Shown here in pieces: positions 10,901 through 13,900 of a DNA stretch of 64,000 nucleotides (positions are counted from its first letter, which is position 1; the number at the start of each line of letters is the position of its first letter). Both the position numbers and the translations under genes were made by a program. Origin of the DNA: Podarcis gaigeae (Eukaryota); assembly GCA_964106915.2 (NCBI GenBank), contig OZ066918.1; one strand, given 5' to 3'. The notes under the pieces were generated by a model. The model did no database searches. It saw nothing but the letters and a program-made list of their open reading frames with translations, and had not been told where the DNA came from.

Positions 10901-13900
10901 TGATAACAGTCCTCATAAAATGAATGTATGGATCTATATATACGGCATTGTCTTCATTCTTATATCTACCTAAATTGAAATTAGAAAAAATTGTATTAAA
11001 AGAAAAGTGATGGTGCATGATATCATTTGAGTATGCTCAGTAGAGGTCTTCCTTTATTTTTGACTTTGTAGGCTCATGACAGTCCAGTGAGNNNNNNNNN
11101 NNNNNNNNNNNNNNNNNNNNNNNNNNNNNNNNNNNNNNNNNNNNNNNNNNNNNNNNNNNNNNNNNNNNNNNNNNNNNNNNNNNNNNNNNNNNNNNNNNNN
11201 NNNNNNNNNNNNNNNNNNNNNNNNNNNNNNNNNNNNNNNNNNNNNNNNNNNNNNNNNNNNNNNATGATTAGACTGTTCTCTAAGTGTATTCTGGGTGCAG
11301 ATATGCATGGGTATTGTCAGATTCTGGGAAATGTTTTGCACCACATAAACATATTTTCTTTTGTTTCCACAATTTCACTGATTTGCTGGCATATCTCTGA
11401 AATAGTGTTGTCCCGGTATCTGCCTCTGCAATATGTTAGAGATGTGTTTGTCTGCTGCATTTTGCACTGGTATTGGTTTCTTTTTATATATGATCACAAT
11501 GTGTATCAGTTACTCTCTTTTTATGCTCACTTGTGTACGATGACAATTTCATTCCAAATAAAGAATTCAGTATTTAATAATATAATTGAATAAAATATAA
11601 TCCAGAAATAAAGCAGCTGCATAGTTCTCACAACATAAAAGAGCTAAATAAAGTGAAGAACTGCTTGACTTGGTGAGTCCAAGATTTACAGTAGCATGTA
11701 GGACCCACACCAATTTCCACATCCAGGTTATGATTAATATTGAATGGGTTATTCAAGTTTGGAATCTAAAGCTGACAAGGCAACTTTAGGACATCTACCT
11801 GGTTCAGTGTCAAGTGTTCCAATTGTGCAAATGTATGCTCAGTATAACAAGTGAACTGAGATTTCCTTGCTGAGATGCATGTGAAGAATGCTTACAGTCT
11901 TTAGCAAATAATGCAAGTGGAATAAATCTTACTCATTTAAAGTGTGTCTGAAGAGCTGAAGAGGAAACTAGACCTACCTCAAAAGTTTTGGTGCTGTCCA
12001 TTGGAGAAGAAGATTCATTACCACAGAAGCACTTTCTGCTGAATTTATCATTTTTCCGTTTGATTCAGGATTTCCTGGCAAAGTTTAACAATATGTCACC
12101 TCATAGGTGTGTGCTATTGTATCTGTGAAGTGGATTTCTCCAAACAAAAAGATTATCTCATATATAAAACGTTCCAGCAATTTCAGGGGGAATGACTGTT
12201 TGAATAATCTCAACAAGAGCATTACTTGATTCTTCACTGCATCACAAAGGATGCGGCTCCCCATCTGTAACTGATGATGGTCCAACCAAATGCCTAACAT
12301 AGCTCAATAAGAAACTGATGCCTGGCTCTCCACAATTTACAACAAGCTTTTCAAGTTCTGAAGCATATTCTGTGACTCTAATGTTTCACTGGAGTGGCAA
12401 ATCTCTTCTCAGTAACTTTTTCTGCCTATATAGGCCATATGATATGTTTCTATTCTTATTTTTAGTAAGCAAATACTTTTACCTGTCTTCCCCCACCCCC
12501 TTGTATTTTGAAATGTTATCTGTGGATGAAGAAATAAGCTTAGTATTAACACTCTTGGGATTGCCTATTTCCACCCTTCTTTCAAAAGCATGGAATGCAT
12601 GCTTTTGTCAGTTTCACATTTTATACAGATGATGCAGAGAATTGCAAATCTATTCAGCTGTGGGTGGAACAGTGCAAAGTGTAAGTTCCCCTTTGGTTGG
12701 GGAACAAAATGCAGGAAAAGTGCTTTTGCTGCATCAAAGTACAAAGCTGAGCTCTCAGTTATGCAAACGGACTCAATTATGTCAACGGATTGAAGTATAT
12801 TTTTCCAGGCACAATATGTTCCAATTTCTCCATCAGTGTATTAACACCTTAGCTAAATTTTGCCCTGTCTGAGAANNNNNNNNNNNNNNNNNNNNNNNNN
12901 NNNNNNNNNNNNNNNNNNNNNNNNNNNNNNNNNNNNNNNNNNNNNNNNNNNNNNNNNNNNNNNNNNNNNNNNNNNNNNNNNNNNNNNNNNNNNNNNNNNN
13001 NNNNNNNCATGAGGAGAGAATTCTTCGAGGTATGTGTACCAGAAAGTACTGATTGAGATATATGAATAGAGGGAAATTATTTGTAGTTGCCTACATAAGG
13101 ACTATACAAAAACCTCCAGTTCCAGCACCCCATCCTTAATAATTCAATCAGTTGTATCACAAGGTTTACAAACCTATTAGTTACTGTTTATGATCTGTTT
13201 AAATTGCTTTAACATTGGAGCATTGTGTACTATGATTATTCCCTACTCCTAGGACTGTTGAAACATCTGTGTAGGAAAGCAAGCTGAATGTCCAGTTTCA
13301 TGTGCCCATTTCTGTATATAACAACTGTAATGAGTTATACCAGAAACACTTTCTCAAGAAGAAGGGGTATTTTCCCTCAAAAACGTAACTTGTTGATGCT
13401 ATCCATTTTCATGTGCCTGTATCAGACTGTGCCACCTTATGGAAAGTGCAGCTTTTCATCAAGTAAATGCCATATAAGCACAGCATCCTTGGAATTCCCT
13501 GACTTCCCACATGGTGTGGACACTACAAAGTTTTAGGGAATGAATTACTGTTTCTAACTAATAGCATAAAGTTAGGTAAAATACATCTTTTATTGAGAAG
13601 AAATAAAGTTGTCAACATATTCATAGACTTATTTATTTGACAAGATTTATATACTGCTTAATTAACAAAAACCTCTTAAGTGGTTTACATTACAAAAATT
13701 TGAAATATATACTAGACAGCGAGGAACAGGGATTGTAGCAACACTGCTTTCATTTTCATTATATCACATGGTATTTTAGTATTCATTCATTTTGTAGGAA
13801 AATTTACCTAGTAATTCTTTTAGCTTTGTAGCCTGACTTGATGTCAATACAGAAAATAAATAGCAAACATTCAGAGACTATTACACTTTAGGAAGTAAAG

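What the first reader, a model, noticed from the sequence alone, without database searches (positions are those of the whole stretch)
11072..11593. Reptile counterpart of the short, membrane-type WDR33 isoform hidden in intron 6
Seen: the exon 6 frame continues after the N-run for 109 visible codons into AT-rich intron 6. It has two hydrophobic stretches ([15 protein letters not shown] and [16 protein letters not shown]) and ends in a TAA embedded in AATAAA. The predicted product is about 331 aa with an incomplete WD40 propeller. Recalled: human WDR33 isoform 2 ends ...[29 protein letters not shown]...[21 protein letters not shown]..., with that Met at codon 65 from the exon start, exactly as here. 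Non-canonical human WDR33 isoforms have been reported to act on STING signalling rather than polyadenylation. Inference: this dual-output design predates the mammal-reptile split, which is probably unannotated in squamates.
Basis: partly seen in the sequence, partly recalled or inferred. Interest (0 to 1): 0.78.

Follow-up and report, generated by a model that had tools for sequence, protein, structure and literature searches.

The report
Lizard copy of short WDR33 isoform
The open reading frame running from WDR33 exon 6 into intron 6 is the lizard counterpart of the known short, membrane-type WDR33 isoform (V2/NET14), so the feature is real but already known from mammals, birds, snakes and fish.

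Summary
A 109-codon frame (11264-11590) follows the N-run, ends at TAA 11591-11593 inside AATAAA 11589-11594, and carries two moderately hydrophobic stretches. The window is the WDR33 gene.

The tail matches mammalian 326-aa WDR33 short isoforms (E 4.7e-20, 60% identity). It also matches bird, snake and other lizard read-through products. The letters under the N-run cannot be read. However, the distance from the exon-6 acceptor to the tail Met is 192 nt, as in four other squamates.

Across sauropsids the shared part of the frame shows moderate protein constraint (omega about 0.46, p 0.0016; shifted frames about 0.9). The DNA itself is conserved even more strongly:
- The block around the first two of four invariant AATAAA hexamers is the most conserved part.
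- The last third of the tail is read in different frames in different lineages, and here through a +1 T.

The idea is not new. V2 and its STING role are published, a zebrafish "isoform 2" is in RefSeq, and snake entries exist unnamed in TrEMBL.

The scan had already noted the four hexamers on this same window (s1-681096), not on other DNA.

Verdict: an unannotated orthologue of a known isoform, of low to moderate interest.

The parts
7792..7995 (+). WDR33 first coding exon (residues 1-68)
   Evidence: tblastn of snake V2 protein P0029, 98.5% identity
9083..9151 (+). WDR33 coding exon, donor GAT|GTAAGT
   Evidence: start approximate
9924..10028 (+). WDR33 coding exon, donor AGG|GTAAGT
   Evidence: start approximate
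10532..10627 (+). WDR33 exon 5, ends ...ETILQ, donor CAG|GTAAAT
11072..11091 (+). Visible first 20 nt of exon 6 (A-H-D-S-P-V), behind an AG acceptor
11092..11263 (.). N-run (172). By spacing it hides the rest of exon 6 (exon about 152 nt), its donor and about the first 40 nt of intron 6. Not filled.
   Evidence: spacing of 192 nt equals that in four squamates
11264..11590 (+). Visible V2-type tail, 109 codons, starting at the Met that is codon 65 from the exon start
11312..11480 (+). Part of the tail read in the same frame in all sauropsids compared; moderate purifying selection
   Evidence: omega about 0.46, excess of synonymous changes p 0.0016; shifted frames 0.85 and 0.96
11481..11485 (+). 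Run of five T with one T more than in ten other sauropsid sequences; shifts the reading frame of the last third of the tail
   Evidence: The same shifted C-terminus occurs in an independent Logan product, P0053.
11541..11543 (+). TGA that ends the tail (...CVR-stop) in the frame used by other lizards and snakes; out of frame here
11557..11562 (+). AATAAA; by position the counterpart of human V2 PAS0. Invariant in 11 sauropsid sequences.
   Evidence: The mammalian tail end ...FIPNKEFSL maps here in a third frame. PAS0 is described in PMC11019558.
11589..11594 (+). AATAAA that contains the stop codon TAA 11591-11593 of this window's frame; invariant
11607..11612 (+). Third AATAAA, kept in all sequences compared
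11647..11652 (+). Fourth AATAAA, followed by a G/T-rich stretch; invariant
11653..11834 (+). Conserved sequence downstream of the hexamer cluster; the lizard-bird alignment ends about here
12876..13007 (.). Second N-run (132). By spacing it hides about the last 50 nt of intron 6 and most of exon 7. Not filled.
13008..13029 (+). Visible end of exon 7 (...HEERILR), donor GAG|GTATGT

Best explanation
This is the lizard orthologue of the alternative 3' end of WDR33 that gives the short isoform known in human as WDR33v2 and in rat as NET14.

Proposed mechanism:
1. When the exon-6 donor is not spliced in time, the reading frame runs on into intron 6 for about 124 codons (about 15 masked, 109 visible).
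2. The transcript is cut and polyadenylated at a cluster of four AATAAA signals (11557-11652).
3. The product would be about 331 residues. It would hold the N-terminus and the first two WD repeats, which cannot close a propeller, plus a cysteine- and aromatic-rich hydrophobic tail.
4. By homology with human V2, the tail would anchor the protein in the ER membrane.

Shown here: gene identity, position, homology of the tail, moderate coding constraint, conserved poly(A) signals, and a weak donor in relatives.

Inferred: that this species makes the mRNA and the protein, membrane insertion, and any link to STING.
For: - **Gene and position.** Exons of WDR33 map in order on the + strand, with exon 6 at 11072.
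- **Homology.** Against 1.84 billion representatives, the tail hits only WDR33 read-through products: P0002 (326 aa, RefSeq squirrel isoform X4) at E 4.7e-20 and P0001 at E 1.1e-20.
- **Relatives.** Bird, snake and lizard relatives were found.
- **Spacing.** Acceptor to Met is 192 nt here and in four squamates, with no stop in them.
- **Constraint.** Omega is about 0.46 with an excess of synonymous changes (p 0.0016). The two shifted frames give 0.85 and 0.96. The only indel in 11312-11480 is 3 nt.
- **Signals.** Four AATAAA hexamers are invariant in 11 sauropsid sequences. The lizard-bird alignment covers only 11264-11834 and the last 60 nt of the intron.
- **Transcripts in relatives.** Bird contigs L014 and L015 join the upstream exons to this tail. 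Full-length snake products, including one from Micrurus carvalhoi, are in TrEMBL; that species is known to me only from venom-gland transcriptomes.
- **Weak donor.** It reads CAG|GTTTAT in four squamates, against GTAAGT-like neighbours in the window. This fits the slow intron-6 splicing reported for human (PMC11445923).
- **Hydrophobic stretches.**
Against:
- The donor and 15 codons are masked, so openness of the frame in this genome is inferred from spacing only.
- Variable sites are almost evenly spread over codon positions (17/57, 17/56, 21/56), and dS is low. Much of the conservation therefore lies at the nucleotide level rather than the protein level.
- The last third of the tail changes frame between lineages.
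- Hydrophobicity is only borderline for a membrane helix (1.65 and 1.42).
Confidence: 0.8

Rival explanations
1. The conserved unit is mainly an RNA-level switch: a weak donor plus an intronic poly(A) cluster that attenuates full-length WDR33 output, possibly as feedback on the 3'-end machinery. The reading frame would be a tolerated by-product that only has to stay open and greasy. This overlaps with the best explanation rather than excluding it.
For: - The block from the TGA through the first two hexamers (11543-11603) has 10% variable columns, against 33% in the shared-frame reading frame.
- Pairwise identity is higher after the stop than inside the frame in all ten pairs compared.
- Synonymous divergence is low, and codon positions vary about equally.
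- The C-terminal third is read in three different frames across amniotes, and all three frames of 11442-11545 are hydrophobic (T is 45% of the bases).
- Some database products shift frame even earlier (P0026, P0003).
- The intragenic poly(A) site of WDR33 depends on PCF11 in human cells and zebrafish (PMC6458999).
- Conserved intronic sites with weak donors autoregulate CstF-77 (PMC3708835).
Against: - The V2 frame, and only that frame, shows an excess of synonymous change.
- The frame is open in every lineage seen.
- Human V2 protein is made and has measured effects (PMC11019558).
Confidence: 0.3
2. In this genome the read-through frame is broken inside the masked stretch, or the extra T at 11481-11485 is an assembly error. 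Either way the predicted 331-aa product would be wrong.
For: The N-run hides the donor and 15 codons. The extra T lies in a homopolymer and is absent from ten other sauropsid sequences.
Against: - Spacing across the N-run is exactly that of four squamates.
- An independent Logan product (P0053) differs from the window's visible tail at one residue and has the same shifted C-terminus.
- Without the extra T the frame would still be open, and would end at TGA 11541-11543 as in other lizards.
Confidence: 0.07
3. A chance open frame in AT-rich intron sequence.
For: T-rich sequence gives hydrophobic peptides in any frame.
Against: Only 44 of 20000 shuffles stay open. Homology reaches E 1e-20. The element is conserved over the bird-lizard distance, while the rest of the intron is not alignable.
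Confidence: 0.01

Closest known systems
Human WDR33v2 (V2) / rat NET14, the intron-6 read-through isoform of WDR33 (Liu et al. 2024, PMC11019558; Liu and Manley 2024, PMC11445923)
   Same: - Same gene, same exon-6 donor read-through, and Met at codon 65 from the exon start.
- 60% identity over 91 residues to a non-human mammalian V2.
- A hydrophobic tail.
- An AATAAA inside the end of the coding sequence; the counterpart of PAS0 is at 11557.
- A weak donor in relatives.
   Different: - After the ...YVRDV motif the mammalian tail follows other reading frames of the same DNA.
- The stop here lies inside the second hexamer, not 12 nt after the first.
- ER location and STING binding are untested in any reptile.
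Sauropsid read-through products already in databases: Crotalinae A0A6B2FD44 and Micrurus carvalhoi A0A2H6MZ05 (313 aa, 'Uncharacterized protein'), and bird entries from Chloebia, Ficedula, Pavo and Nothoprocta
   Same: Orthologous tail: 79% identity to the pit-viper protein over 72 residues. The four hexamers are the same.
   Different: The named pit-viper and coral-snake products, and two of the other lizards, end at ...CVR-TGA. The window, its near-twin P0053, birds, one other snake (P0048) and one other lizard (P0052) end further on, in the ...[10 protein letters not shown]... frame, reached by different indels.
Zebrafish WDR33 isoform 2 (RefSeq; P0077, 290 aa), other teleost short isoforms and a frog short isoform
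   Same: Read-through of the same donor. The first 12 or so read-through residues are shared (ARFIxNxPFSVV type), followed by a hydrophobic tail.
   Different: Beyond those residues the tails are not recognisably homologous to the amniote tail.
Conserved intronic poly(A) sites in other 3'-end factor genes (CstF-77 intron 3, PMC3708835; PCF11, PMC6458999)
   Same: A weak donor plus a conserved intronic poly(A) site in a gene of the cleavage/polyadenylation machinery.
   Different: Those sites are described as giving no functional protein. Here a conserved open frame is attached, and autoregulation of WDR33 through this site has not been shown.

Membership tests
WDR33 V2 / NET14 isoform | Lies in the WDR33 gene directly after exon 6, as a continuation of the exon-6 frame past its donor | tested here: inconclusive
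   Gene and position are met. Frame continuity is supported by the 192-nt spacing shared with four squamates. The donor and 15 codons are masked in this genome.
WDR33 V2 / NET14 isoform | Tail sequence homologous to the mammalian V2 tail | tested here: met
   phmmer E 4.7e-20 to a 326-aa squirrel isoform and E 1.1e-20 to P0001. Searches from the mammalian and snake tails recover each other and bird and lizard products.
WDR33 V2 / NET14 isoform | In-frame stop and AAUAAA signals inside intron 6 | tested here: met
   TAA 11591-11593, and four AATAAA at 11557, 11589, 11607 and 11647, invariant in 11 sauropsid sequences.
WDR33 V2 / NET14 isoform | [quoted passage not shown] | tested here: inconclusive
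   Truncation after exon 6 follows from the map, and Pfam finds WD40 in the snake orthologue. Kyte-Doolittle peaks of 1.65 and 1.42 are borderline. No dedicated membrane predictor was available.
WDR33 V2 / NET14 isoform | mRNA made by intronic or exonic polyadenylation with intron 6 retained | not testable with these tools
Spliced bird contigs L014 and L015 carry the tail, and snake full-length products exist, but nothing is available for this species.
WDR33 V2 / NET14 isoform | ER localisation and binding to STING | not testable with these tools
   Known only for human (PMC11019558).

The most novel reading that the evidence does not exclude
Selection may act first on the RNA switch: a weak exon-6 donor plus a four-hexamer poly(A) cluster, kept nearly letter for letter over the bird-lizard distance and, by back-reading of protein ends, in mammals and a frog.

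On this reading, the last third of the protein tail only needs to be an open hydrophobic frame. Because the DNA is T-rich, all three frames are hydrophobic, so lineages can hop between frames by 1-2 nt indels without losing a membrane anchor. This window does so through a +1 T.

In this lizard the hop puts the stop beyond the first hexamer. Use of that first site would then give a message without a stop codon.
Probability: 0.35. Interest if true: 0.5.

Novelty: new member of a known kind. Interest (0 to 1): 0.27.

Why it matters
The finding adds a lizard orthologue to an isoform whose function is documented only in human cells. It shows that the amniote-type tail and its poly(A) cluster are shared across amniotes.

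The practical value is for annotation: squamate gene sets should carry this short isoform.

The more interesting by-product is the pattern of constraint. The nucleotide sequence and the signals are conserved more strongly than the protein, and the membrane-anchor region tolerates frame changes. This bears on whether V2 exists mainly as a protein or mainly as a way to throttle WDR33.

Tried and rejected
- **Read laying.** I sent 10640-15000 with three RNA runs and one DNA run.
- **The look-up of sequencing runs.** No listed holder is on record as RNA. Twelve small runs of a related species, guessed to be RNA, hold about 55% of the sampled words, the same share as that species' DNA run. This is suggestive only.
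- **Rfam on 11312-12875.** Nothing at E up to 1, so no known structured RNA explains the conservation.
- **Pfam on the tail.** No family.
- **Findings search for 'WDR33'.** Nothing.
- **Joined spliced model.** I did not search it; exons were handled by reference, piece by piece.
- **N-runs.** I did not fill them. Relatives were used only for distances, stop counts and the donor motif. I did not fetch the contig of the near-identical product P0053, because it might be another copy of this genome.
- **Chance ORF.** Rejected.
- **Gene-caller artefact.** The extra C-terminal residues of P0028 and P0030 are a TGA read as W by the gene caller, not real extensions.

Full report
**What is in the window**

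The + strand carries the WDR33 gene.
- The first coding exon is at 7792-7995.
- Further exons lie at about 9083-9151, 9924-10028 and 10532-10627.
- Exon 6 starts at 11072.
- Later WD exons lie near 31700 and 33900.
- The collagen-like exon is at 39027-40118, and the C-terminal exons run to about 47160.

Only two N-runs exist: 11092-11263 (172 nt) and 12876-13007 (132 nt).

**The observation**

Exon 6 opens behind an AG at 11072 and reads A-H-D-S-P-V in phase 0. After the N-run, a frame of 109 codons runs 11264-11590. It stops at TAA 11591-11593, which lies inside AATAAA 11589-11594.

Their Kyte-Doolittle 19-residue means are 1.65 and 1.42, which is borderline for a membrane helix.

The frame is not a chance product. 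Only 44 of 20000 shuffles of 11312-11590 stay stop-free, and the two other frames carry 2-3 stops.

**The N-run, tested first**

Its letters cannot be read, and I did not fill them. The distance from the exon-6 acceptor to the tail Met is 192 nt, or 64 codons. That distance is identical in four other squamate contigs (L001, L002, L003, L006), none of which has a stop in between. In a 326-aa squirrel isoform the same two landmarks are also 64 residues apart.

The second N-run spans 157 nt between flanking landmarks, against 160 nt in five relatives. The N-runs therefore look like true-length masks. An in-frame continuation is likely but not shown for this genome.

**Homology**

HMMER against 1.84 billion representatives found only three hits, all WDR33 read-through products. 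They are P0002 (326 aa, E 4.7e-20, 60% identity over 91 residues), P0001 (E 1.1e-20) and P0003 (E 1.1e-6).

Word-indexed searches from the mammalian and snake tails gave:
- named mammalian 'WDR33 isoform X' entries;
- bird entries;
- a Crotalinae TrEMBL entry;
- several unnamed Logan products from lizards and snakes.

Cluster look-up added Micrurus carvalhoi (313 aa), Crotalus horridus, Chloebia, Ficedula, Pavo and Nothoprocta.

A profile search added a RefSeq zebrafish 'WDR33 isoform 2' (290 aa), many teleost short isoforms and a frog one. These read through the same donor and share roughly the first 12 read-through residues. Their tails then diverge.

**Is it coding?**

I aligned the window with ten sauropsid sequences: two other lizards, two snakes and six birds.

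- Variable columns are spread almost evenly over codon positions: 17/57, 17/56 and 21/56.
- Pairwise Nei-Gojobori omega in the V2 frame is 0.29-0.94. In the two shifted frames it is about 0.4-1.8.
- Parsimony counts on the tree give 27 synonymous and 45 non-synonymous changes. That is an omega of about 0.46, with an excess of synonymous change at p 0.0016. The shifted frames give 0.85 and 0.96, neither significant.
- The only indel in this part is 3 nt.

This part is therefore under moderate protein-level constraint. Synonymous divergence between lizard and bird is only 0.37-0.47, while the rest of the intron cannot be aligned between them. The nucleotides themselves are constrained too.

**The signals are the most conserved part**

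The block 11543-11603 has 10% variable columns, against 33% in the shared-frame part of the reading frame. Identity after the stop exceeds identity inside the frame in all ten pairs compared.

Four AATAAA hexamers, at 11557, 11589, 11607 and 11647, are invariant in all eleven sequences. The last is followed by a G/T-rich stretch.

The lizard-bird alignment runs from 11264 to about 11834. It resumes only in the last 60 nt of the intron.

No Rfam family matches.

**Frame hopping in the last third**

At 11481-11485 the window has one T more than the ten other sauropsid sequences. Two of the other lizards and two snake sequences therefore end at ...CVR-TGA, which corresponds to 11541-11543. The window reads on in another frame to the TAA at 11591.

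Birds, one other snake (P0048) and one other lizard (P0052) reach that same end frame through different indels.

Mammalian tails follow the window's V2 frame up to ...YVRDV (11447). They then match pieces of all three frames and end with ...FIPNKEFSL, which maps onto 11548-11574 in the third frame, across the first hexamer. That hexamer therefore corresponds to human PAS0, which lies 12 nt before the human stop (PMC11019558).

All three frames of 11442-11545 are hydrophobic, with mean Kyte-Doolittle values of 0.99 to 1.66. The stretch is 45% T.

The extra T is probably real. An independent Logan product (P0053) differs from the visible tail at one residue and has the same shifted end.

One inference follows. 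In this lizard the stop lies 29 nt past the first hexamer, so cleavage directed by that hexamer would often leave no stop codon. The later hexamers would be needed for a normal message.

**Splicing context**

In four other squamates the exon-6 donor reads CAG|GTTTAT. The visible donors of the neighbouring exons in the window are GTAGGT, GTAAGT, GTAAGT, GTAAAT and GTATGT. A weak donor fits the slow intron-6 splicing and weak poly(A) sites reported for human V2 (PMC11445923). The window's own donor is masked.

**Expression**

No listed holder is on record as RNA.

In relatives, two bird contigs (L014, L015) join the upstream exons to this tail and run on past the four hexamers. The snake TrEMBL products are full-length and spliced. 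Micrurus carvalhoi is known to me only from venom-gland transcriptomes (PMC6368836), so I infer that its entry comes from RNA.

**What is known already**

- Liu et al. 2024 (PMC11019558) showed that human V2 arises by polyadenylation with intron 6 retained. It has a 118-residue hydrophobic C-terminus, sits in the ER and modulates STING. The rat homologue is NET14. V2 is annotated in some vertebrates, and V2-like products were proposed in Drosophila and Nematostella.
- Kamieniarz-Gdula et al. 2019 (PMC6458999) showed a PCF11-dependent intragenic poly(A) site in WDR33 in human cells and zebrafish.
- Conserved intronic sites with weak donors that autoregulate CstF-77 are described in PMC3708835.

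**Verdict**

The feature is real and is the orthologue of a known isoform. The claim that the design predates the mammal-reptile split is right, but it is already in the literature and the databases.

- a measured, moderate coding constraint;
- the finding that the poly(A) cluster is conserved more strongly than the protein;
- the frame changes in the membrane-anchor region.

An earlier first-stage note on this same window (s1-681096) had pointed to the four hexamers. I confirmed them and their conservation, but not the proposed autoregulation.

Noticed in passing
window 12876-13029: The second N-run covers about the last 50 nt of intron 6 and most of exon 7; the visible end reads ...HEERILR before GTATGT. 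Both ends of intron 6 are thus masked as human-like, which hints at very high nucleotide conservation there. In human, exon 7 carries another V2 poly(A) site (PMC11019558).
   Followed up: partly
window 52200-52838 (-): An intronless 213-residue ORF matches Pfam Got1/Sft2-like (E 4.6e-20). It is probably the SFT2D3 neighbour of WDR33.
   Followed up: partly
window 53886-54824 (+); also 1005-1304, 14779-15438, 44147-44542 (-): Reverse-transcriptase fragments of retrotransposons. The first matches Pfam RVT_1 (E 5.7e-9); the others look similar by eye.
   Followed up: partly
L002:457-999, L003:128-724: Logan products P0028 and P0030 run past a TGA that the contig DNA clearly has. The gene caller read TGA as W, so their last residues are an artefact.
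   Followed up: yes
P0026 (312 aa) and P0003 (128 aa), Logan products of unknown species: These read-through products shift frame much earlier in the tail, after ...SEVV and after ...LHP respectively, yet stay open and hydrophobic. They may be real variants or assembly errors.
   Followed up: no
P0059 (312 aa, Logan, unknown species): A divergent WDR33 short product (N-terminus MALEITSPP...) shares about 54 tail residues with the bird tail (E 7e-10). The amniote-type tail may therefore be older than amniotes.
   Followed up: partly
window 11921-11926: A fifth AATAAA lies 270 nt beyond the cluster, outside the block conserved with birds.
   Followed up: no
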